A stretch of 64,000 bases of DNA from Takakia lepidozioides. Taxonomy: Eukaryota; Plantae; Bryophyta. Each line of letters opens with the position of its first letter. Position 1 is the first letter of the stretch. Location of the stretch: the NCBI GenBank assembly GCA_030704615.1, contig CM060732.1:68572001-68636000 (forward strand). The letters run 5' to 3'. The position numbers were made by a program, and so were the translations under genes. Positions 47,884-62,700 of the stretch are shown in pieces. The notes under the pieces were generated by a model, which saw nothing but the letters and a program-made list of their open reading frames with translations, was not told the origin of the DNA and ran no database searches.

Positions 47884-50800
47884 TCACTCTTGAATGGTGC
47901 ACAAGCTGTGAACTCTAAGATCTTTCCTGAACTTCTCAAATTTGATTTTGCCGAGTGGTTTGGTGAGTATGTCTGCAATTTGGTCTTTCGTTGGAACATG
48001 GATGAGGTCAATTTCACCACTCTCAACTTTCTCTCTAATATAGTGGTGGTGTACCTCAATGTGCTTTGTCCTGGCATGAAAAACTGGGTTCTTTGCAATC
48101 TTTACACTGCTTTGATTATCACAAAAGAGAGCAGTAGGTCCAACCTCCAAAATGCCCAATTCTTCAGCTAGTCTCCTCAGCCAAGTAATCTCCTTGGCTC
48201 CCTCTGTCAAAGCACGATATTCCGCCTCGGTTGATGATAAATCAATAGTTGGTTGCTTCTTCGACATCCAGGTTATTGCACTCTCCCCTAATCGAGCCAC
48301 GTAACCTGATGTGGAGTGCCTCGAATCACTGTCTCCTACCCAATCTGCATCAGTGAATGCATTTAGAATGCTTTCATCTCCCTTGCGAAAGAATAGTCCG
48401 TAGTCCAGTGTTCCTCTTACATACTTCATCACTTGCTTAACTGCATCGAGATGGGCTTGTTGTGAAGCCGACAGGAACTTGCTGACTATGGAGACAGAAA
48501 ACATCAAGTCTGGTCTTGTATTTGTTAGGTACACGAGCTTCCCTACCATCCTACGATACACAGCTGGTTCGGTAGCAGGTGATCCCATATCCAATGACAA
48601 TTTCAGTCCTTCAATCATGGGCACGGTGGCAGGATTAGCATCCCAAAGACCGAATTCCTCAATCATCTTCTTCGCATATGTCCTCTGTGTCATCAGTATT
48701 CCTCTTTCTAGATGCAATAACTCAGCCGCCAAGTACAAACTAGCAAGTCCCAGATCTGACATTTCAAATGCTTCTTTCAATTGATCTCTCAACCATTGAA
48801 TCTTCTTGTGGTGATTGCCAGTGAGAAGTAAGTCATCCACATAAAGAACTAGAATGATGATCATACCATCTATTCTGAAGTAGTACAAGTTATGATCTGC
48901 ACCGCTTCTCTGCATACCTTGTGATTTCAGATAGGCATCAATTTTGGCGTACCACGCTCTAGGGGCTTGCTTCAAGCCAGAGCTTTGAGAAGTCTACATA
49001 CCAATGAATAATCCCCGTTGAATGTTCCCTCCGGTTGTTCCATGTATACTTCGTCATCAAGGTCTCCATTGAGAAATGTCGTCTTCACATCAAGATGGTA
49101 GATGGGCCATGTGTTGTATGCGGCTAGAGCAACTATGGTCCGAATTGTTCCCCACTTGACTACTGGCGCGAAGGTCTCATCAAAGTCGATTCCCTCCCTT
49201 TGCTCAAATCCATGAGCAACCAGCCGAGCTTTGAGTTTTTCTGGGGTGCCATCAGCCTTGTGTTTCACTTTGAAAATCCATTTCGCAGTGATTGGCCTCT
49301 TTCCAAGAGGAAGTGGGACTAGTTCCCAAGTCTGATTCTTGGCAATGGAGTCTAGCTCCTATTTCATTGCATCCCTCCAGCCAGAAATTTTTAGCCTCGG
49401 TGAAGGTTGAAGGTTTATAAGGAACCTCGAGTGTGTTTACCTCATAGTCCTGTAGATGTGCGGGGCGTCGTCGTTGTCAGACTGGACAAATGGGGGAGAC
49501 AGGTCTGTACAGTGCAACTCTGGGAGATCCAAGTTCGGGCCCTGGTTTCTCAAGTGGTGGTTGTGCGGGGACAGAATCTGGTTCTGGAGTGACTTGAGAT
49601 TGGAGTGTAACCTCATTTGAGCCCTCTTGATCAGCATGAATCGGAAGATCAACATGTAGATCTAGGGATTTCGGTGATGAGGGTGTTGAGTTAACACCAA
49701 TGGCCAGGGGAGACTCTTCCAAGTTGTCTGTCGGTGGAGTAGCATAAATAGTTGGTGGATCTATACTTACGGGCTGTTCTATGAATCGGACATCTCTGCT
49801 GATGAAAATCTTCCTTGAGAGAGGATTATACAGCCTGTATCCTTTTGTAGTGGTGTCATATCCAACAAAAATGCATTCCTTAGACTTAGAGTCTAATTTG
49901 CTGCGTAACTTATGTTTCTCTATGTGAACATAAGAGATGCTCCCAAAGACTCTCAAATGGTTCAAGTCTGGTTTGATACCTGAGAAAAATTCGTAAGGAG
50001 TTGACCCTGAGTTCGCTTTTGATGGAGATCTGTTCAGCAGATACGCCCCTGTGTTCACCGCTTCAGTCCACAGATACTTGGGTAGAGTTTTTTCCAGTAA
50101 AAGACTTCTTGCATGTTCAAGAAGCGTTCTTTTTTTTCGTTCGGCGACACTATTTTGTTGTGGTGTATGGGGCTGAGGTAAGTTGGCGTTGGATGCCGGT
50201 TGCTTGCAGAAATGCCGTGAACTCTCCCGATAAGAATTCTCCACCCCTGTCTGTGCGAAGCTTGACAATAGATATGTCAGTGGCATTTTCTATCATAGCT
50301 TTAAACACTTTGAAGTGTTTCAAGGCCTCACTCTTAGCCTTTAGGAAATACACCCAAGTAAACCTACTATGGTCGTCTGTGATGGTCATGAAATACCTTG
50401 ATCCTGAGAGTGATGGCACTGGGAGTGGACCACATAGGTCCATATGCACCAATTCGAGGATTTTCTTTGCCCTGTTTTGAGATGACCGAGGAAATCTTTC
50501 CCGGTGCTGCTTCCCCATGAGACATGCACCACACACCTCTTTCAGTAACGGCAGTTTCAGTATTCCTTCCGCTTTGTTGTGATTTGACAGATAATGGAGT
50601 CCGTGAAAGTTCAGATGCCCAAGCCGTCTATGCCACAATCTAGCAGAAGTATCATCTTCTACAGAGAGAACTTCAGTACTGTCTACGACATGAGATTCTA
50701 GTGATCGTGAAGAGTGTGATTCTACTTTATACAAACTATTCTCTGGGTCCCTATTACCACTGAGTCTAATCGTGTGTGGAGATTTTGAGTCTACAAAAAT

Positions 50801-51600
50801 ACATTTTCTAGAACTAAAAATTCCTAAGTGACCTGAATCTGTCAAGGCACCTACAGAAATCAGATTTTTGTTAACTCCAGGCACGTAGAGAACATCAGTT
50901 ATCTTTTTTATTGCTCCATTTGAAAGCTGCAGGTTGGCATGGCCTTTGTCTGCCACATTGTGATGTTGTCCCCCAACTGATCTCACGGTGTTTGTATGAG
51001 CTGGTATTACTACGTTCTGTAGCAGGGACTTGTTCCCAGAGATATGTCTACTAGCTCCTGAGTCTACGTACCAATCAGACTCTTTCCCTACGTCCATGGA
51101 AGTTAATGCGACTTCTAGCATATGAGCTAAGTCGGCAATATCATCATCCTCAGGGTCAGAGCCGTCTTGATCACTTTGATCATCTTCAACCATGTTGGCT
51201 TGCTGTGTGGAGCGAATCTTGAGGACTTCCTCATATGGCACAGCGCAGTTTCGAGCCCAGTGGCCGGGCTTGCCGCATCTGTTGCAACAAGATGTGGATT
51301 TATTGATGTGAAAGTTTCCGTGACTAGCCCCTCCTTCCTTTTGATGAAATTTCTTGAACTTCACCCAAAGTGCCTCATCCTCGTCACTGGTCTTCTTGCT
51401 CTTGAGCTCTCGTCGGGATTCTTCATACAACAGCATCCCAGAAAGTTCTTCGAAATCCGTTCTTCTTTGTAAGCAATCACGATTGATTGAGTGTAGTGCT
51501 CGTATGAATCTAGAAGGGCATTCACCATCTCTGAAAGAACATCATTCTCTATGGTCTCTCCAAAACAAGCAAGTTGATTCACCATGCGTCTGCTTCCAAC
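47884..51600 (-). pseudogene. Copia gag-pol (Zn knuckle, protease, integrase, RT, RNase H) with several frameshifts
   Basis: CNRCGKPGHWARNC, WYVDSGASRH, LWHRRLGH, HMDLCGP, RTDRGGEF, LKARLVA, YVDD, TDADW, ADILTK. Frameshifts near 51440, 50160, 49400-49500 and 48972. The gag N-terminus is missing. Confidence 0.92.
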
Positions 51601-51603
51601 AGA

Positions 51604-52590
51604 CATTCACATTTTGCCTCGATTGTTCCACCATTGACTGAGGTCAGAAACGTATTCACTCCAGAGCTTCTCCTCGAGTCTCTGTTATCTATTTTTCGAT
51701 ACTTTCCTGTCGACCACATTGGCAGTAACATGTCAAAATCACTCCCCACCATAGATCCACCAACGAGCTAACTTGCAGAATTCAACATAAAAATTTAGGG
51801 ATGACTCTGATAGCAGGGGAAAACAGGGTGAAATATGTTGAAGAAGGTACATTCAATAGCAGCACCTTGTTCTATGAATTGTGTTGTTGCCGCTGCTGTT
51901 TCCAGTTGACCATCTACCCACTTGTAGCCGTTGTGCTATTGAAAGAGATCATAGGTCTCCAAAGCCTCCATACCATGTCCCTGCTCTGCATACCCTGCAA
52001 GCATCGCGTTCCATGACTCCACATCTCATTCAGCCATAGTGTTGAAAACTCCCTTCACATCCTTAATGCATCCACATTTGGCATACATGTCCACCAGGGC
52101 AGTGTTTAGAATGAGATCTGGTACATTTCCAGCTTTGACGATGTCACCATGGACCTCTTTTCCCTTTTCCAAAGCTCCCAGGCATGCACACACATTGCAA
52201 ACACAAACAAACGTGATGTGGTTGGGCTTCACCCCTTTGCGCATCATTTGCTCATAGGTCTCCAAAGCATTCCTACCACACCCATGCTTGGTAAATCCTG
52301 CCAACATTATATTCCACGTGGTCAAAGATCGTTGAGGCATTCTGTTCAAAACTTGGTGAGCATGCATGATGCTCATGCACTTAACATACATGTTTGACAT
52401 GGGTGCTGAGTAGAAAAACATTTGGCGTGAATCCACTTTGGATAATGTGACAGTGCAGCTGCTTCCATGCTATCCACGCCTCTGTACAAATCATGCATAC
52501 ATCCTTGCCGTGCTGCTAGCAGACGACAAATAACAGCCTAGATTTGTTCTAGGAAACACCCAACTCACCTTATCACCTTATCACACTAGT
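51604..52590 (-). pseudogene. Scrambled second copy of the PDF-PPR gene (intron relic, PPR motifs, PDF halves)
   Basis: PPR motifs at 51960-52436. KWVDGQLETAAA and RLEEKLWSEYVSDLSQWWNNRGK|GTGAAT at 51604-51957. 52455-52590 is homologous to intron 54815-54993. Confidence 0.7.
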
Positions 52591-55500
52591 TCCACAAACG
52601 TGATGTGGTTGGGCTTCACCCCTTCGCACATCATTTGCTCATAGGTCTCCAAAGCCTCCATCCCGCGCCCTTGCTGTGCATATCCTGCAATCATCGCACT
52701 CCACGATACCACATCTTGTTCAGCCATGGTGTCGAACACTCTTGTTGCATCCTCAATGCACCCACATTTTGCATACATGCCCACCAGGGTATTGTTCAAA
52801 ATGACATTTGGTACAATTCCAGCCGTGACGATGTCGCCATGGACCTCTTTGCAAGCCCTTTTCCAGAGCTGCCAGGGTTGTGTTCAGAATGACATTTGGT
52901 ACAATTCCAGCTTTGATGATGTCACAATGCAGCTCTTTGCCCTTTCCCAGGGCTCACAGGCTTGCACAAGCATTGCAAGTGCACACAAACGTGATGTGGT
53001 CGGGTTTCACCCCTTCGCACATCATTTGCTCATACGTCTCCAAAGCCTCCATCACGCGCCCCCGCTGTGCATTCCCTGCGAGCAACGCACTCCACGACAC
53101 CACATTTTACTCAGCCATATTGTTGAACACTCCCTTTGCATCCTCGATGCTCCCACATTTGGCATACATGTCCACTAGCTTTGAATCTCTATTTTTCCTA
53201 TGACGCCAATTAATGTCTCGATCTTCCACTTCAGCAGGTGAAGCCCAGTGATTGGGGGAATCACCAGTTGACTAGAGGTCTAGATGCCCAACATGCTTGT
53301 TCACCCTGCCTCTTGTAAAGTAATCCAAGGTGCCCCCATTCGACGTCAAATGTAGAGAAAATGGCAGCCCCTTGTTCCTCAGAGCATCTGCATATTGTGC
53401 CCAACAAGACCCCCCACAATTTGTGCCCTTCAACCATTAAGTCAAAGAAAATATTGGCCATTGCTCATTTAACACAAATGTGTTTGTTATCAAAGACTAA
53501 AGCACATCGAGCCTTCCAGATGTGCCACAACCCCAGACCTCGAAGCGCATGCCAAACTTGACAAGACTGCCAGGGAACATCAACAGAGATATTAAGTAAC
53601 ATAATAAGAGGATCCCTGCAATCATAAATCCGCCAGTTCATGTACAAGGTATGAACTTTGGACCAAATTGAGGCCGCAAAGGGACAAGTCAAGAAGCAGT
53701 GCTGAAAGGTTTCAATTTTCCCCAAAGAACAAGACCTGCACACATTGTTAGACCGGGCTGAGAAAAGGATAAAGGAAGAATCTTGTTGCATAGCTCAGGA
53801 TCACATCTGGTACGATTCTAGCTCTGACGATGTCGCCATGCACCTCTTTGCCCTTTTCCAGGGCTGCCAGGCTTGCACACGCACTGCAAACGCACACAAA
53901 TGTGATGTGGTCGGGCTTCATCTCTTCACACATCATTTGCTCATATGTATCCAAAGCCTCCATCCCGCGCCCCTGCTGTGCATACCTTGCGAGCATCGCA
54001 CTCCACGACACCACATTTCGTTCAGCCATATTGTTGAACACTCCCTTTGCATCCTCGATGCTCCCACATTTGGCATACATGTCCACCAGGGCAGTGTTCA
54101 GGATCACATCTGGTCCTCATCTGGTACGACTCCAGCTCTGACGATGTCACCATGCACCTCTTTGCCCTTTTCCAGGGCTGCTAGGCTTGCACACGCACTG
54201 CAAACACACACAAACGTGATGTGGTCGGGCTTCACCCCTTCCCCCATCATTTGCTCATAGGTCTCCAAAGCATTCCTACCACACCCATGCTTGGTAAATC
54301 CTCCCAACATTATATTCCACATGATCAAAGATCGTTGAGGCATTCTATAGAACACTTGGTGAGCATCCATGATGCTCCCGCACTTAACATACATGTTGAC
54401 AAGGGTGTTGAGGAGAATAACATTTGGCGTGAATCCACTTTGGATAATGTGAGTTTGCACCTGCTTTTCAGCTTCCAGGCCTTTCACCTTGATGCACTTA
54501 TGCAAGAGACAAACATACGTATCTGAATATGCTGAAATGCCTCCTTGGTTTAAAGTCTGTAGAGCCTCTGTCAGTCTGCCTGCCTCACAAAGCATCTTCA
54601 CATGCCCATAAGTGCCAGAAGAAGCATTGTGGACTCCCTCTCTTGATCCGCTTCCAGAAGCTGTGGTCACGGTTGAGGTGCCTGGTTTTATCAATTGTGC
54701 CGCTGCAGCTGCTGCCTTCAGTTGACCATCTACCCATGCAGGTTTCTTGTGGCTATTGATCCACAGGGAATCATAGGTAATCTTGTGCTTGAAATCTGGC
54801 CCTCTTGGAAGACTCTGTACCCACTCTCTATCCCTGCTCCTTCAGCTATCCATGCGTCTGCACAAATCATGCATTCATCCTTGTCTTGCTGCTAGCAGCT
54901 GACAATAACAACCTAGACACCCAACTTAGCTTATGACCCTAGTTCCTATGCTGAATTGCGTCTGCTACTCTTTATAATCTAACAGGCATTCACCTTTTTG
55001 CCTCGATTGTCTCACCATTGACTGGGGTCACAAAAGTATCCATTCCACAGCTTCTCCTCATCTCTATTACATACTTTCCTGTTGTCACATTGGCAGTATC
55101 ATGTCAAACTCACTCCTAACTAGATTCACTCAACCACCTAACTTGCAGAATTCAACATGGAAATTTAGGGCCGATTCTGATAAGAGGGAAAAACAGGGTG
55201 AAATGTGTTGAAGGAGGTGCCTTCAATAGAAGTGCCTGACTCTATCAATTGTGCCGTTGCTGCTGCCGCTTCCAGTTGACCATCTACCCATGTAGGTTTA
55301 TTGTAGCTATCCTTCCACAGGGAATCATAGGTAATGTGGAGCTTGAAATCCAGCCCTCTTGGATGAATCTGGACCCACACTCTATCCCTGCTCCTTCAGC
55401 TATCCATGCCTCTGACAGCCTAGAATTCTACTAGCAAACACCCCAACCATACTGGTGTGGAGTTCTTCCCCAAAACACCCCAACCCTACTTATCACAATC

Positions 55501-55896
55501 TGAAATGCATCTCTGTAATCCAACAAACATTCACCTTTTTGTCTCCATTGTCCCACCATTGACTGGGGTCGGAAAGTGTTCACCCCAAAGCTTCTCCTCA
55601 CCTCTATTGTATGTTTTTGGATACTTCCCTACTGCCAGTTTGGCAATAACTTGCCAAAGTCACTCCAAACCACCACAGATCCACCCAACGACCTAACTTA
55701 CAGAATTCAATATGCATCTTGCGGCCGAGTCTGATGAGAGGGCAACACAGGCTGAAATAGGTTGAAGAAGAAGGTGCCCTCACCACATTGTCCTTGACCT
55801 CGTATCCTGACCCATGGAGGATTTGACCGACCATCAACCCAAAATGACCTCTTGTGTGTGCTGCTTGTGTCTATAGTCAGGTAATGTCGGATTGGT
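52590..55896 (-). pseudogene. PLS-class PPR gene with N-terminal tandem OSB-type PDF motifs
   Basis: Exons 55896-55535, 55368-54994 and 54814 onward. PDF motifs NPTLPDYRHK, HPRGLDFKLH and LPRGPDFKHK lead in frame into ORF 54104-54694 and P-L-S triplets (VVSWSAMLA.YAQ.G, PDHITFVCVCSACASLAALEKGKEVH, NTALVDMYAKCGSIEDA). Stops and frameshifts present; no E/DYW domain seen. Confidence 0.82.
53180..53790 (-). mobile_element. 3' fragment of a plant L1-type LINE (zf-RVT) inserted in the PPR array
   Basis: CRSC..ETFQHCFLTCPFAASIW...LWHIWKARCALVF. Interrupts one PPR S-motif; TAGCT occurs at both junctions. Confidence 0.8.
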
Positions 55897-55926
55897 CTAT
55901 GAAATCGAACCACTACAGTGCAGCTG

Positions 55927-58900
55927 TGTCGCGGCCCTTTGCCTTGAGAGCAGGGGGTCGGGACACATGAGGGGCTGCCCCTGTGGTGGGGGTAGCGGCA
56001 GCGATAGGTATGGGGGGCTGAAGCACCCTTGAGTGCCCAAGGCACTCAGGGAAGCGGAGGCGCTCACTAGGTGGAGCCCCGCACACCGGGTTGCGGTGGG
56101 GGTGGCTCCACAAGGGGTGGTGGTAGCTTAGCGGGACTTAGTGGGGGTGGCATAGGACTCACCATGGGAGCGGAGACCTCGTGGTGGGAGTCGTGGGGAG
56201 TCTTGGGACTCATCGCGGTCCATAGGGGCCGTGGTGAGCGGGCCAAGACTCACCGCGACTCATCACCGGGAGTCGAGGGTTTTCGTGGTGGTTCGCCATA
56301 AAATGGCATGGCTGGTTGTGAAACCCCCGCGGACACCTATATAAGTATATATAGGGAGTAGTAACCCCGAGAACGGTGCAAGCCCGTTGGTGACCAAAAA
56401 CTAGTGAGTAAGCGAGCGAGCCGGAAAGCGACCAAAGAGTGGGGAGCTGTTCCGGACTGCCATCTACCAAAGGGAATTCTCCTAGTCCCAAATAGGTGGA
56501 GGGTTTAGTGGGAAGCAAAGGGGGACCGTTATGTCCCGATGAGCAGCCAAAGCTCCAAGTTGGCCCGGGCGGCCAGGTTGGGAGTCAGGCGCGCGCATCA
56601 AAGCGAGTAACTATGACTTGAAGGGGAGCTTACCGAAGTGAGGTGCGCGACACTTGGTATCAGAGCTTAGAGTTCAGTACGTGATCGTCCTTGGGATTGG
56701 CCTCATCATGGGGTCGGGCAAGCCAAAGCGAAAGCGGAACGGCCCAAAAGATGATGATCTTGGTGAGCCTGATGGGGGCGACGTGTCACCGAAGCGGCCG
56801 TTTGAGGAAGCGACGCAGGTTTCTGAAAGCGAGGCTGCTCAAGAGCGGGAGGAATCCGAGGAGTCGGAGCCCAAGGAATCCGTGAGAGCTCCGACCGACC
56901 AACAGATGCCTCCCATGCCGGCAGCCTTTTGGGAAGGGTTGTTGGCGCAGTTTGGCGGGACGTTGAAAGACGTGTTGAAGGCAGCTAATGCCACTTCCAC
57001 TAAGGCAAAGTTTAAGGTGAAGCCTAAGGAACCCGGCACCTTCGAGGGCGTCCGAAATCGGAAGGCACTCAACACCTGGCTCCTGGAGCTAGAGCAGTAC
57101 TTCCGGGCGGCCAAGTTGAGTGACGAGGATCGGGTGGAAGTGGCTCCCACCTATTTGAGGGGCTATGCTCAACAATGGTGGCAGAAACGCCTTCACGACC
57201 AAGGCCCAAGCCCGGAAACCTTGAACTGGAGTGGGTTCAAGGAATTGATGAAGAGACAGTTTGTGCCCCTCAACGCGTCCTGGCTCGCCCAGGACAAGAT
57301 GAGGAATTTGAAGCAAACAGATGACATTCGGGGATATGTCCAGGCTTTCAATGTGCTGTTGCTCGAAGTTGCGGACATGGCAGAACCAGAAATGGTCTTC
57401 AACTTTGTGGCGGGACTAGCCCCATGGGCCAGGCGGAAGTTGGAGGAGAAGCCACCCAAGACTTTGAATGAGGCTATTGAGAGGGCTGAATGTTTCTCAG
57501 ATGTCCCTAGGGGTGAAAGACAAGGCCGTACGGAGCTAAACCACAAGAAGATTCGGCGGGAAGGTGACTCCTTCCGACCGGAAAAGAAGTGGGATAGGCC
57601 ACGCGGCGAAAATGGCACGTGGAAATCGAAGGGAGGGCCTTCACATGTCAAGGCGGCACCCGATGCTTCGAAAGGAAAAGCGGGTGGAGCGGCTTATGGC
57701 GGACAGAAGGCGACCTTTGATGGAGTGTGTTTCAATTGCGGGGAGCCCGGGCACATGGCCAAGAAGTGCACAAAGCCCCGGCAATTGAACATGACTCGAG
57801 CGACCACAGAGCTGTCGGAAGATACCATCAGTCGCTTGGTGGAAGCGGTGGTCGCCAGGACTTGCAAGGTAGGCAAATTTTCTTGTGAGTTGTATCAGGA
57901 AACTGGCGCCTTACGAAAAGGGAGTCAGTTATTGTTCGTGGATGGGATAATATCCGGAACTAATGTGTCGTTGTTGGTGGACACAGGAGCGTCGCACTCC
58001 TTCATGACACCGGCAACGACACAAAAGCTGGGACTCCCGACAAGTGACGTGGGGGCCTCTATTGAGGTGCGTTCTGCCAAAGGAGAACCACATTTGGCGA
58101 CAAGGTTGGCGTTTGATGTTCCTCTTCAACTGGGGAGTTGGGAGGGACGTGAGAACTTCACCATCTGCGAGATCGATGGAGTGGATCTCATTTTGGGGAT
58201 GACCTTTTTGAGCAAATCCGGAGCGGTCATAGATGGCCGCAAGAGAGTAGTCACGCTGCCATGTGGGAATGGTGGCGAGGTTTTACGAGTGTCGGAAACG
58301 CCCAAATCCGTGGGAGGGCGAATAAACCTTCTGTCAGCAAGGGAGTGGGCCGTGGAGGAGGCACACGAGCCCCAGTTTTTGCTTTACATTAGAGAAGTGA
58401 AGGGAGAAGGCGATGGGGAGCCGAGCCCAGATTGGATCAAGGGGATCTTGGAGAAATACCAGGATGTGATGTCGGAGGATTTACCAAGCGGCTTGCCACC
58501 GCGAAGAGGAGTTGACCACAAGATTGAGGTGATACCGGGATCGGAACCGCCTGCCAAGGCACCCTACCGGTTGAGCCACAGAGAGTTGGTCGAGCTGAAG
58601 ACTCAGCTCAAGGATCTAATGTCAAAGGGGTACATCCGGCCGAGTAAGTCACCTTACGGAGCCCCGGTGCTATTCGCAGACAAGAAGGATGGGACGCTGC
58701 GGATGTGTGTCGATTACAGGGCTTTGAATAAGGTGACTATTAAAAACCGGTACCCTTTGCCAAGGATCGACGACCTTTTCGACCGGTTGGCAGGAGCAAA
58801 GTATTTCAGCCGGATCGACTTGCGCTCCGGCTATCATCAAATTCGGGTGGCGGAAGGAGATGAGGAGAAGACCGCGTGCATGACAAGGTATGGTTCATAT

Positions 58901-61900
58901 GAGTTCTTGGTGATGCCTTTTGGGCTCACTAATGCACCGGCGACCTTTAGCACGCTGATGAACAGCCTTTTTCAGGAGTGGTTGGATGATTTTGTGATCG
59001 TGTACATCGACGACATCTTAGTGTACTCGAAAACAAAGGAGGAACACCTGGAGCACCTCAAAAGGGTGTTCCAAAAGTTGCGAGAAGGGAAGCTGTATGC
59101 CAAAGCTTCAAAGTGCAAATTCGGGGTCACGAAAGTGGAGTTCTTGGGGCATGTGATTACACAGGATGGGATCAAAATGGATGACAGAAAGGTGAGGGCG
59201 ATCTTGGACTGGGAGCCTCCGACTTCGGTCCCGGGAGTGCGTTCCTTCCTAGGACTCGCCTCCTATTACCGGAAGTATGTGAGAAATTTTGCCAAGATCG
59301 CGGGGCCGCTGTCAGACCTTCTGTGTAAATCTAAAGTCTGGGCATGGAACACCTTTTGTGGCCAAGTTTTTGCTGAATTGAAGCAGCGGATGGCGGAAGC
59401 TCCAGTCTTGAAAATCCCGGAGTTCGATCGTCCATTTGAGATTCATACAGATGCGTTGGACTTCGCGATTGGGGGTGTACTTATGCAAGATGAACGTCCA
59501 GTGGCTTACGAAAGTAAGAAGCTGAATGAAGTGGAGCGACGGTGGCCGACGCACGAAAAAGAGATGAAGGCGGTGGTGCACTGTCTTGAGCTTTGGTGCC
59601 ACTATGTTGGTTCCAAACCCAGTGAAGGTGTTCACGGACAATGTCACGGTGAAGTATTTTGCCACGCAGCCCAAGTTGTCCCCAAAACAACTTAGGTGGC
59701 AAGATACTTTGGCGGTGTTCGACGTGGATATCCAGTACAAACCGGGACGAGACAACGTGGTGGCCGATGCTTTAAGTAGAAAGCAGCAGCTCTTGTTGGT
59801 GTACAAGGGCGAGACGGCGCTCCAAAGGAAGATCCGGAAGGCTTGCCGGAAGGATGAGCTAGCGAAGTCCGTGATGCAGGACTTGAGGATGGGGGTTAAA
59901 TCGCAGTTCCACTTGCAAAATGGACTGCTCCGGTATAAGCAAAAGCGCCTCTACGTGCCAAAGGGAGGGATCAGAGACATCCTCTTGAGAGAATGCCATG
60001 ATAGCCCACTTGCGGGCCACGGCGGAGCCAAGCGCACTGCGGCACTCTTGAAGAAAGAGTATTTCTGGCCCAAACTGAGGGAGGAGGCAGAGGAGTATGT
60101 CAAGACATGCACCACATGCCAACAAAACCGAAGCGAGTACAAAAAGCAAGCGGGGCTGTTACAACCCTTGCCGATTCCAGAGGGGACTTGGGAAAGCGTC
60201 TCGATGGATTTCATGACTGCTATGCCGCTGTCAAAAGGATTCGATGCAATCAAGGTGGTGGTGGATAGGTTTAGTAAAGTGGGCCATTTCATCCCCACCA
60301 AAGAGACGGCAACGGCGCAGGAGACAAGGCGACTTTACTTCGCCCACGTCTTAAAGCATCATGGAGTCCCGAAGGATATTGTCTCGGACCGCGATCCAAA
60401 GTTTACGAGTAAATTCTGGAGAGCACTTTGGAAGAAGATGGGGACGAGGCTGAAGATGAGCACCGCCTTCCGACCTACGACTGACGGCCAAATAGAAAGA
60501 GTGAATTCCGTAGTGAAGCAGATCTTGCGGAATTACGTGTCGGCAGACCAAACAGACTGGGTGGAACACTTAGACGCGACAGAGTTCTGTTATAATAACA
60601 CAGAACACTCCGCAACGGGAGTTTCCCCTTTCGTATTGGTCTATGGAAAAGCACCTCTGGTGCCGACAAGTTGGGCCGCCCAGGACGTTGAGGAACCGGC
60701 AGTAGCGGCGGTACTGGAAGAACGCGAGCGTTTGTTGAAGCTCGCAAAGTACAACATTGCCAAAACTGGGAAACGGTATGAAAGGCAGGCGAATCGAAAG
60801 CGGAGGGAAGTGAAGTTTGAGGCAGGCACGGAGGTCTGGTTGAACCTCAAGAATTTCCGACTACCTCCGGAAGTGAGTCCGAAGTCCGTACCTCCGTATG
60901 CGGGTCCCTTTCGCATTCGGAAGGTTATGAATGAGGATGTGTATGAATTGGAGCTGCCGGCAAACAGCAAGGTGCACCCAGTATTCCATGTCTCCCTTTT
61001 GAAGCCTTACTTCAAAGATGAAGCACGTCCGAATCGGCATCAAGTGTTGCGTCCGCCACCTATGCTGTTGGATCATGAAAATGAACCTGAGTACGAGGTG
61101 GAGGCAATACTTAAGTCGAGGAGGTTCAAGAACCGAGAAACGGAGTATCTCGTCAAATGGAAGGGCTATCATCATGTGGAGGCATCTTGGGTGCATGCCT
61201 CAGAAATGGGAAACGCATCCGAGGCGGTTGCAGCTTTCGAAGGGCGACCTCAAAGCGGAAGAAGCGTTGATGGGGACATCAACCTTGGAGCGTGGGGGAG
61301 GAAATGCATGCTTAGCCCGGCTTAGGTAGCTTAGGGATCCGATTACAAAAACTTGTATTGTACAAAAAATTTGTTATAAAGGAAATGGGCTCCAAATGTT
61401 GTGCGTCCTATTTTGTTTGGAATGGTGATGCATGTTATGGTTGGCTAGTGTGTAGAATGCATGCTAGCTTATAAAAGTGGGAGAGGTAAATTGGGTTAAT
61501 CGTGTGTTTGCGTAGTGCCGAAATCGGGTGACCCCCATCCAAGGGGCAAGGGAACTTGCGCCTTTCTTAAAAAGAGTGCACTGGGAGGAGCTGGAGGGGC
61601 TCCACCCTTGGCCGGGACTTGGAGGAAGTCGGCCGAACTAGCTAGTGGAGAGTAGAGTCAGGTGTGGGGTTTGGTTCTTTGTCATGGGACGCCATGGTAC
61701 GGAAACAAACTCCTTGATGTGGGACGCCACAACTTGGATGTTCGTTTCTACAAAATGGACAAGTCGATGAGGACATCAACTCCCTGTTGGTAGGGGTGTG
61801 TGTCGCGGCCCTTTGCCTTGAGGGCAGGGGGTCGGGACACATGAGGGGCTGCCCCTGTGGTGGGGGCAATGGCAGCGATAGGTATGGGGGGCTGAAGCAC

Positions 61901-62526
61901 CCTTGAGTGCCCAAGGCACTCAGGGAAGCGGAGGCGCTCAATAGGTGGAGCCCCGCACACCGGGTTGCGGTGGGGGTGGCTCCACAAGGGGGGGTGGTAG
62001 CTTAGCGGGACTTAGTGGGGGTGGCATAGGACTCACCATGGGAGCGGAGACCTCGTGGTGGGAGTCGTGGGGAGTCTTGGGACTCATCGCGGTCCATAGG
62101 GGCCTTGGTGAGCGGGCCAAGACTCACCGCGACTCATCACCGGGAGTCGAGGGTTTTCGTGGTGGTTCGCCATAAAATGGCATGGCTGGTTGTGAAACCC
62201 CCGCGGACACCTACAGAAGTATATATAGGGAGTAGTAACCCCGAGAACGGTGCAAGCCCGTTGGTGACCAAAAACTAGTGAGTAAACGAACGAGCCGGAA
62301 AGCGACCAAAGAGTGGGGAGCTGTTCCGGACTGCCATCTACCAAAGGGAATTCTCCTAGTCCCAAATAGGTGGAGGGTTTAGTGGGAAGCGAAGGGGGAC
62401 CGTTATGTCCCGGTGAGCAGCCGAAGCTCCAAGTTGGCCCGGGCGGCCAGGTTGGGAGTCAGGCGCGCGCATCAAAGCGAGTAACTATGACTTGAAGGGG
62501 AGCTTACCGAAGTGAGGTGCGCGACA
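55927..62526 (+). mobile_element. Near-intact Ty3/Gypsy chromovirus
   Basis: 726-bp LTRs at 55927-56652 and 61801-62526 (~14 differences by eye). TSD AGCTG. PBS TGGTATCAGAGC at 56655-56666. Confidence 0.96.
56708..61325 (+). CDS. Chromovirus gag-pol polyprotein with a C-terminal chromodomain; one +1 frameshift near 59620
   Basis: Gag, [28 protein letters not shown], RNase H, integrase ([15 protein letters not shown]), GPF motif, chromodomain EYEVEAIL...YLVKWKGY. An extra C in AAACCCAGTG joins ORFs 56654-59695 and 59586-61325. Confidence 0.92.
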
Positions 62527-62619: not shown

Positions 62620-62700
62620 CCTCTTCTCCTTCCTGCATCATTTGCTCAACACCTCCATCCCAGGCCCCTGCATATCCTGCTATCATCGCGTTCCATCCCT
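62620..62700 (-). pseudogene. Degenerate PPR motif fragment
   Basis: WNAMIAGYA...EQMMQEG on the minus strand. Confidence 0.55.

What the first reader, a model, noticed from the sequence alone, without database searches (positions are those of the whole stretch)
54104..55896. Tandem OSB-type PDF ssDNA-binding motifs fused to a PLS-class PPR array
Seen: splicing the minus-strand exons (55896-55535, 55368-54994, 54814 onward) yields three repeats of a ~50-aa motif. (1) TNPTLPDYRHK...SFWVDGRSNPPWV (second half only). (2) EEKLWGEHFsDPSQWWDNGDKK|IHPRGLDFKLHITYDSLWKDSYNKPTWVDGQL. (3) EEKLWNGYFCDPSQW*DNRGKK|SLPRGPDFKHKITYDSLWINSHKKPAWVDGQL. The third runs in frame into HVKMLCEAGRLTEAL and the P-L-S PPR triplets. 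Established: LW..FF..P..WWDNR..K.NP..PDFKHK.T...LW is the PDF motif of plant organellar ssDNA-binding proteins (Arabidopsis OSB1-4/pTAC9), and PLS PPRs are the sequence-specific factors of organellar RNA editing. Inference: this lineage has a family of PDF-PPR chimeras that could tether RNA editing or processing to nucleoid ssDNA or transcription bubbles, or use PDF motifs as an extra nucleic-acid clamp. I know of no functional description of this architecture, though similar unannotated proteins may exist in fern or bryophyte proteomes. This copy is pseudogenised.
Basis: partly seen in the sequence, partly recalled or inferred. Interest (0 to 1): 0.85.

Follow-up and report, generated by a model that had tools for sequence, protein, structure and literature searches.

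The report
Dead copy of PDF-motif PPR gene
[quoted passage not shown] The family is real and I found no paper describing it, but this copy is dead.

Summary
On the minus strand, 55,893-54,719 carries three PDF-like units, each split into an A half and a B half by a GT-AG intron. The last B half runs in one open frame into PLS-type PPR repeats.

A profile built only from OSB-family proteins (no PPR) hits exactly these places at 11.6-34.7 bits. The rest of the 64 kb and the reversed window reach at most 6.3 bits.

Intact PDF-PPR proteins exist in the lycophyte Diphasiastrum complanatum (one with E motif and full DYW deaminase), in several Sphagnum mosses, and on one Logan contig with three PDFs. 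Their PDFs score 72-86 bits against the OSB-only profile.

The phase-0 intron inside the motif (DNRxxK|xxxxxPDF) sits at the same place in OSB genes of Marchantia, Physcomitrium and Ipomoea. It sits there too in PDF-PPR genes of Diphasiastrum and Sphagnum, and in the window. This favours exon transfer from an OSB gene.

This copy is dead: frameshifts, in-frame stops, an 11-nt insertion, a retroelement scrap, no E/DYW end, scrambled partial duplicates and retrotransposon flanks.

Function of the PDF module on PPR proteins is untested. I found no paper on the architecture. The scan has reported the same family on other DNA of this genome (482 notes).

The parts
55806..55893 (-). PDF unit 1: B half only (PDYRHK ... 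SFWVDGRSNPPWV), frameshifted; cut off upstream by the gypsy LTR at 55925
   Evidence: OSB-only HMM: 11.6 bits (profile 27-40) and 13.1 bits (profile 39-54) in two frames
55535..55599 (-). PDF unit 2, A half (EEKLWGEHF / DPSQWWDNGDKK) with a 1-nt deletion; the invariant R of DNR is changed to G
   Evidence: HMM 18.3 bits, profile 12-27
55369..55534 (-). Intron inside PDF unit 2, GT..AG, phase 0, at DNGDKK|IHPRGLDF
   Evidence: Read; same position and phase as annotated introns in six genes of five other species
55270..55368 (-). PDF unit 2, B half (IHPRGLDFKLHITYDSLWKDSYNKPTWVDGQLE); P of PDF changed to L; the frame closes at 55165
   Evidence: HMM 20.5 bits, profile 27-56
54994..55062 (-). PDF unit 3, A half (DEEKLWNGYFCDPSQW*DNRGKK) with in-frame TGA at 55014-55012
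   Evidence: HMM 15.4 bits, profile 2-18, and 5.4 bits, profile 20-28
54815..54993 (-). Intron inside PDF unit 3, GT..AG, phase 0, at DNRGKK|SLPRGPDF
   Evidence: position shared with OSB and PDF-PPR genes elsewhere
54104..54814 (-). Exon holding the PDF unit 3 B half, a 40-residue linker and the first PLS PPR repeats in one open frame. It ends at a TGA created by an 11-nt insertion (gaggaccagat) near 54110-54120
   Evidence: Pfam PPR_2 E 1.3e-16, PPR E 2.9e-13; HMM 34.7 bits, profile 27-55; aligns from residue 3 to P0001 and from residue 5 to P0005 across PDF and PPR
53800..54103 (-). PPR repeats continuing in another frame after the 11-nt insertion
   Evidence: ORF 53748-54107
53230..53800 (-). 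Foreign insert in the PPR array: scrap of a non-LTR retroelement (zf-RVT-like)
   Evidence: Pfam zf-RVT 22.8 bits, E 1.5e-4, under the cut-off; no PPR homology; depth about 80-260 in DNA run X1 against 1e5-1e6 around it
52590..53205 (-). Further PPR repeats with in-frame stops, frame changes and an internal duplication junction
51949..52542 (-). Second, partial gene copy: a scrap of the unit-3 intron (52469-52542, 86% to 54845-54917), then PPR repeats (51949-52464, 86% to 53941-54466) with stops
51613..51935 (-). PDF scrap joined to the end of the second PPR copy: B tail (YKWVDGQLE, 51935-51900), intron-like stretch, and A half (EEKLWSEYVSDLSQWWNNRGK, 51675-51613). Homology ends about 51595 at the copia fragment
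   Evidence: HMM 21.7 bits, profile 4-23
55925..62526 (+). Ty3/gypsy LTR retrotransposon that cuts the locus upstream; 728-nt LTRs 98.1% alike

Best explanation
The locus is a non-functional, rearranged remnant of a nuclear gene of the PDF-PPR family.

Intact members of the family encode:
- a presumed organellar transit peptide (inferred, not tested);
- one to three N-terminal PDF modules, each coded by two exons split by a phase-0 intron;
- a PLS-class PPR array;
- an E motif, and in some members a DYW cytidine deaminase.

The PDF exons share sequence, invariant residues and intron position with the PDF exons of OSB genes. The module was therefore most likely carried from an OSB gene onto a PPR gene at the DNA level. 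This probably happened before mosses and lycophytes parted (inference).

Mechanism in intact members (inferred, not shown). The PPR array reads its RNA target and the DYW or E end edits a C downstream. The PDF module sits at the N-terminal, that is 5', side of the bound RNA. It adds a sequence-independent grip on single-stranded nucleic acid through its invariant aromatic and basic residues. My split of the odds:
- about 0.4 that it grips RNA upstream of the target;
- about 0.3 that it holds the editor on single-stranded DNA of the nucleoid or transcription bubble;
- about 0.2 that it is a protein-contact module;
- about 0.1 other.

The copy in this window does nothing. It has lost its start, its E/DYW end and its reading frame, and has been cut by retroelements.
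For: - Sequence and frames.
- The OSB-only PDF profile hits only these places in 64 kb.
- PPR identity: Pfam and 21,159 PPR hits.
- Intact relatives with the same order of parts in Diphasiastrum, Sphagnum and a Logan contig.
- The OSB identity of the comparison set: PF00436 plus source names OSB1/OSB2/OSB3.
- Nine invariant and seven nearly invariant columns are shared by OSB and PPR-borne motifs.
- Same phase-0 intron in OSB genes of Marchantia, Physcomitrium and Ipomoea, in PDF-PPR genes of Diphasiastrum (two genes) and Sphagnum, and in the window.
- The PDF plus PPR head of the Sphagnum protein folds confidently (pLDDT 90.9). Its PPR part superposes on a PPR-DYW/RNA crystal structure, 9kfx_A, at rmsd 1.0 over 188 columns.
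- Lesions.
- ssDNA binding by the PDF motif of OSB1 is taken from PMC6963530 and PMC4166229.
Against: - No RNA evidence for this genome. The two runs guessed to be RNA are contigs only, and they also hold sequence of the intron inside the motif.
- No intact copy of this genome was seen by me.
- OSB1 and OSB2 prefer ssDNA over RNA (PMC4166229), which speaks against the RNA-clamp reading and for the DNA-tether reading.
- The PDF-only model has no solved structural relative, so its fold gives no clue to mechanism.
- The motif tree is short and weakly supported.
Confidence: 0.88

Rival explanations
1. Chance juxtaposition after death: unrelated scraps of an OSB gene and of a PPR gene happen to lie side by side.
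For: The locus is a mosaic with illegitimate junctions and retroelement insertions.
Against: - The B half and the PPR array share one open frame of 237 codons.
- The same order and spacing is found in intact proteins of Diphasiastrum and Sphagnum, which align to the window from residue 3-5 across both parts.
- There is no OB-fold anywhere in the window.
Confidence: 0.02
2. The motif only resembles the OSB PDF motif by convergence, or is a general N-terminal feature of PPR proteins.
For: The motif is short (about 50 residues). Pfam has no model for it. Only 7 of the 150 best PPR representatives carry it, so it is not general.
Against: - 72-86 bits against a profile made without any PPR protein.
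- A PPR-borne motif used as query finds PF00436 OSB-type proteins at E 4.7e-35.
- The phase-0 intron position is identical in OSB and PDF-PPR genes.
Confidence: 0.02
3. The copy is still in use, for example as a truncated PDF-PPR protein, or rescued by alternative splicing.
For: Family sequence is present in two runs guessed to be RNA, while the neighbouring LTR is nearly absent from them. The 237-codon frame of the last exon is open.
Against: - Every A half upstream of that exon has a stop or a frameshift.
- No start or transit-peptide exon is present, because the gypsy LTR begins 30 nt upstream of unit 1.
- There is no E/DYW end.
- The private insert 53194-53809 has zero depth in both RNA-like runs.
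Confidence: 0.04
4. The very high copy number and the scrambled head-to-tail scraps arise because pieces of a PDF-PPR gene were captured and spread by a mobile element, not by ordinary gene duplication. This concerns how the copies arose; it is compatible with the main explanation.
For: - 52,496 contig pieces of DNA run X1 lie on 4.6 kb at 95% likeness or more.
- Introns are as deep as exons, and about a thousand times deeper than the private insert.
- 482 notes of the scan in this genome hold the words PDF, OSB and PPR.
- The junctions are PPR-to-PDF-tail.
Against: - No terminal repeats or other transposon ends were looked for or seen.
- Summed contig depth is not a copy number (tool note).
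- PPR repeats within one gene match each other, which inflates depth.
- Large PPR expansions by dispersed duplication are known in mosses, hornworts and lycophytes (PMC13386178).
Confidence: 0.15

Closest known systems
[quoted passage not shown]
   Same: The PDF module is the same: same signature (W..FF..P..WWDNR..K..P..PDFKHK...LW....P.WV), nine invariant columns, and the same phase-0 intron inside the motif. One to three copies per protein occur in both families.
   Different: OSB proteins have an SSB-like OB-fold (PF00436) in front of C-terminal PDF motifs. Here there is no OB-fold, and the PDF modules lie N-terminal to a PPR array.
PLS-class PPR RNA-editing factors (PPR-E, PPR-DYW)
   Same: - P-L-S repeat triplets.
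- The opening helix motif (LCEAGRLTEAL) typical of moss and lycophyte members.
- Intact relatives end in an E motif or a full DYW deaminase.
- The PPR head of the Sphagnum relative superposes on a PPR-DYW/RNA crystal structure.
   Different: Described editing factors have no PDF module. The described fusion partners are MORF, RRM and RanBP2 zinc fingers (PMC13386178), not PDF. Most PPR genes lack introns; these keep OSB-type introns in the front part.
Diphasiastrum complanatum O6H91_09G020300 (KAJ7542975) and Sphagnum fallax BDL97_10G099700 (KAH8950714), filed as hypothetical proteins
   Same: Same order of parts: PDF, short linker, PLS PPR. In Sphagnum the B half is fused to the PPR exon, as in the window.
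   Different: They are intact and end in E or DYW. Identity to the window's exon is only about 40-44%. Diphasiastrum has one more intron between the PDF and the PPR exon.

Membership tests
PDF motif (module of OSB proteins) | About 50 residues with the conserved Pro-Asp-Phe signature and flanking W/WWDNR/LW/P.WV residues | tested here: met
   Units 2 and 3 and the fourth A half carry the signature. Unit 3 keeps all invariant residues except the W turned into TGA.
PDF motif (module of OSB proteins) | Scores against a profile built from OSB proteins only, above background | tested here: met
   11.6-34.7 bits per half, against at most 6.3 elsewhere and 6.2 in the reversed window. The halves were scored apart; the spliced join was not made.
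PDF motif (module of OSB proteins) | Gene structure: phase-0 intron at DNRxxK|xxxxxPDF | tested here: met
   Marchantia, Physcomitrium and Ipomoea OSB genes, and the window (AAG|GT ... AG|).
PDF motif (module of OSB proteins) | Binds single-stranded DNA | not testable with these tools
   Known for AtOSB1 only, from PMC6963530 and PMC4166229.
OSB protein family | SSB-like OB-fold domain (PF00436) N-terminal to the PDF motifs | tested here: not met
   tblastn with three OSB OB-fold regions gives no hit better than E 0.5 in the window. PDF-PPR proteins have no PF00436. Hence this is not an OSB gene.
PLS-class PPR editing factors | Array of P, L and S pentatricopeptide repeats | tested here: met
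   Pfam PPR_2, PPR, PPR_1 and PPR_3; repeat pattern read; top library hits are long PLS proteins.
PLS-class PPR editing factors | C-terminal E motif and/or DYW deaminase | tested here: not met
   Absent from the whole window. Present in intact relatives: P0307 has E plus DYW_deaminase at E 3.4e-33; P0276, P0310, P0287, P0295 and P0086 have an E motif.
PLS-class PPR editing factors | Continuous reading frame from start codon to C-terminal domain | tested here: not met
   Stops, frameshifts, insert and truncations.
PLS-class PPR editing factors | Organellar targeting and editing activity | not testable with these tools
   No targeting predictor or assay was on hand.

The most novel reading that the evidence does not exclude
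PDF-PPR(-DYW) proteins are an old class of editing factors, dating from before mosses and lycophytes parted. An OSB-derived PDF module holds the editor on single-stranded organellar DNA (nucleoid, R-loops or transcription bubbles), so that editing is coupled to transcription or to DNA maintenance. In this genome the family has burst to a very large number of near-identical copies, most of them decaying.
Probability: 0.2. Interest if true: 0.75.

Novelty: new variant of a known kind. Interest (0 to 1): 0.45.

Why it matters
Editing factors of plant organelles are thought of as a PPR array plus E/DYW end, helped in seed plants by MORF, ORRM and OZ partners. A built-in single-stranded-DNA-binding module in the editing factors of mosses and lycophytes would be a new accessory part.

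It gives a testable link between RNA editing and the nucleoid, and a new natural part for designer PPR editors.

The shared intron also gives a clean case of exon transfer between two organelle-maintenance gene families.

The locus itself adds only one more dead copy. Its value is as evidence that the family is large and turning over fast in this genome.

Tried and rejected
- Protein search with residues 1-40 of the last exon found no candidate, because of word and length limits of the tool. This says nothing on absence.
- Look-ups of P0001, P0169 and P0267 by exact product failed, because only the longest isoform is on record. Longer isoforms or other species were used instead.
- Read laying gave only short contigs (65-400 nt) of a highly repeated family. 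None of the 15 joints shown matches the two predicted introns, 232 more joints were not shown, and sequence of the intron inside the motif is present in the runs guessed to be RNA. Splicing and expression in this genome therefore stay open.
- The PDF-only model (pLDDT 85.5) has no solved relative: Foldseek E 4 or worse, VIA-align Z at most 3.5. No mechanism can be drawn from fold.
- Motif tree: the 15 PPR-borne PDFs fall in a clade of 18 of 83 leaves, with local supports 0.71-0.88, midpoint root, 56 columns. That is too weak to claim a single origin.
- No clean target-site duplication was seen for the gypsy element.
- The weak Pfam hit Transpos_assoc in the last exon (26.9 bits, under the cut-off) lies on PPR helices and is taken as spurious.
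- The species of the window and of SRR4210093 was not identified.
Full report
**What is there**

Read on the minus strand, the stretch 55,893-54,719 holds three units of a motif of about 50 residues. Each unit is coded in two halves.

- The A half reads EEKLW..YF.DPSQWWDNRGKK.
- The B half reads ..PRGPDFKHKITYDSLW....KPAWVDGQL.
- The two halves are separated by a GT..AG intron that falls between two codons: 55534-55369 in unit 2 and 54993-54815 in unit 3.

Unit 1 has only a frameshifted B half. Unit 2 has a 1-nt deletion in its A half, and it has lost two invariant residues (R of DNR, P of PDF). Unit 3 keeps all invariant residues but has TGA in place of a tryptophan codon (55014-55012).

The B half of unit 3 continues in one open frame of 237 codons. 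It runs through a short linker into HVKMLCEAGRLTEAL and P-L-S pentatricopeptide repeats (Pfam PPR_2 E 1.3e-16).

Otherwise the description is exact.

Each half was handled by reference or scored apart.

**Is it the OSB PDF motif?**

A PPR-borne motif from the library (P0001) used as query found proteins with an SSB-type OB-fold (PF00436) and two PDF motifs at E 4.7e-35. The relatives of that protein are named OSB1, OSB2 and OSB3 by their sources.

From 121 such proteins I cut 134 motifs and built a profile that holds no PPR protein. Results on the six-frame translation of the whole window:

- It hits only the places named above, at 34.7, 21.7, 20.5, 18.3, 15.4, 13.1 and 11.6 bits.
- A halves cover profile positions 2-27 and B halves cover positions 27-56.
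- The best score elsewhere is 6.3 bits, and in the reversed window 6.2.

What the PDF motif is, and that the motif of AtOSB1 suffices for ssDNA binding, I take from PMC6963530 and PMC4166229.

**Does the family exist?**

An exhaustive HMMER search with the last exon gave 21,159 PPR hits. Among the 150 best representatives, seven carry the motif:

- four genes of the lycophyte Diphasiastrum complanatum;
- one gene of Sphagnum, also found in four Sphagnum species;
- two Logan contigs.

Their complete motifs score 72-86 bits against the OSB-only profile. KAJ7542975 has one PDF, PLS repeats, an E motif and a complete DYW deaminase (PF14432, E 3.4e-33). The others end in an E motif. P0086 has three PDFs in an uninterrupted ORF of 1371 codons.

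An alignment of OSB and PPR-borne motifs has nine invariant and seven nearly invariant columns, mostly aromatic and basic residues.

A structure search in the ESM Atlas with the Sphagnum motif found three Streptophyta PPR/DYW clusters (127, 63 and 57 members) and one SSB-domain cluster.

**Shared gene structure**

I mapped the exon junctions on genomic loci. The intron inside the motif is phase 0 and lies three residues after DNR and five before PDF in all of these:

- the OSB genes of Marchantia polymorpha, Physcomitrium patens and Ipomoea nil;
- two Diphasiastrum PDF-PPR genes;
- the Sphagnum jensenii PDF-PPR gene;
- the window, at the same spot (AAG|GT ... AG|AGT).

This speaks for descent of the PPR-borne module from OSB exons at the DNA level, and against convergence. 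A word search of the scan's earlier notes for this point returned nothing.

**State of this copy**

It is dead.

- Beyond the lesions in the PDF units, an 11-nt insertion shifts the frame and closes it at 54104.
- The array goes on in other frames.
- It is broken at 53800-53230 by a zf-RVT-like retroelement scrap.
- It resumes with in-frame stops and a duplication junction.
- It is followed by a second partial copy (51949-52464, 86% to 53941-54466), which is joined to another PDF tail and A half.
- No E or DYW sequence and no OB-fold is present anywhere in the 64 kb.
- Upstream, a gypsy element with 98.1% identical LTRs starts 30 nt from unit 1. Beyond it lies only a small PPR scrap.
- Downstream, a copia fragment follows.

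**Reads**

All runs are kept as contigs, so levels and ends cannot be read.

- In DNA run X1, 52,496 pieces lie on 4.6 kb at 95% likeness or more. Exons and introns are alike in summed depth, about a thousand times that of the private insert.
- Together with the 482 notes of the scan that hold the words PDF, OSB and PPR in this genome, this points to a very large, young family. The depth is not a copy number.
- Two runs guessed to be RNA hold family sequence but almost none of the neighbouring LTR. This fits transcription of the family.
- Those runs also hold sequence of the intron inside the motif, and none of this copy's private insert.

Expression and splicing in this genome are thus not shown by me. 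Earlier follow-ups of the scan report spliced RNA contigs for other copies, which I did not check.

**How it may work**

This is inference. PPR arrays bind RNA with their N-terminal repeats on the 5' side, and the DYW end acts just 3' of the bound stretch. This is established knowledge, and it fits the 9kfx match.

A PDF module in front of the array would therefore lie upstream of the target. Its conserved aromatic and basic residues fit a sequence-independent grip on single strands.

OSB1 and OSB2 prefer ssDNA to RNA (PMC4166229). A tether to nucleoid ssDNA is therefore a serious alternative to an RNA clamp.

The PDF plus PPR head folds with high confidence (pLDDT 90.9). The PDF alone folds as helix, small sheet, helix (pLDDT 85.5), with no solved relative.

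**Novelty**

- Full-text searches found three papers that name the PDF motif with OSB. None links it to PPR proteins.
- A 2026 survey of OSB evolution never mentions PPR.
- A 2026 kingdom-wide survey of editing factors and their domain fusions never mentions OSB or PDF.
- The proteins are public but filed as hypothetical or plain PPR proteins.

I rate the architecture a new variant of a known kind. This locus is an ordinary dead member, already met many times by the scan on other DNA of this genome.

Noticed in passing
window 55925-62526: Ty3/gypsy LTR retrotransposon. It has 728-nt LTRs (55925-56652 and 61799-62526) that are 98.1% alike, and an open 1013-codon gag-protease-RT-RNase H frame, so it is a young insertion. 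No clean target-site duplication was seen.
   Followed up: partly
window 49477-51606, minus strand: Ty1/copia fragment (gag knuckle, protease barrel, integrase, SH3-like) without a 5' LTR. It abuts the last PDF scrap at about 51595.
   Followed up: partly
window 53230-53800: zf-RVT-like scrap of a non-LTR retroelement inside the PPR array. It is the only near-unique part of the locus in the DNA run, and it is absent from the RNA-like runs.
   Followed up: partly
window 62652-62700, minus strand: Small PPR scrap (WNAMIAGYA) just beyond the gypsy element. The chain of gene scraps therefore went on upstream before the insertion.
   Followed up: no
window 51500-56100 (reads): In one DNA run, family sequence (introns included) has a summed contig depth about a thousand times that of the private insert, with 52,496 pieces at 95% likeness or more. 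This suggests a very large, young, DNA-level amplification of PDF-PPR genes in this genome.
   Followed up: partly
P0310 residues 44-108 (ESM Atlas): Predicted models of two tailed-phage (Uroviricota) clusters of 187-199 aa align to the PDF module at TM 0.64-0.73 by query. A third phage cluster with Rad52_Rad22 aligns at TM 0.45. This is a weak lead that the PDF module has relatives among phage ssDNA proteins.
   Followed up: no
L002 and L004 against the window: In Diphasiastrum a phase-2 intron separates the last PDF exon from the PPR exon. In Sphagnum and in the window the two are one exon.
   Followed up: yes
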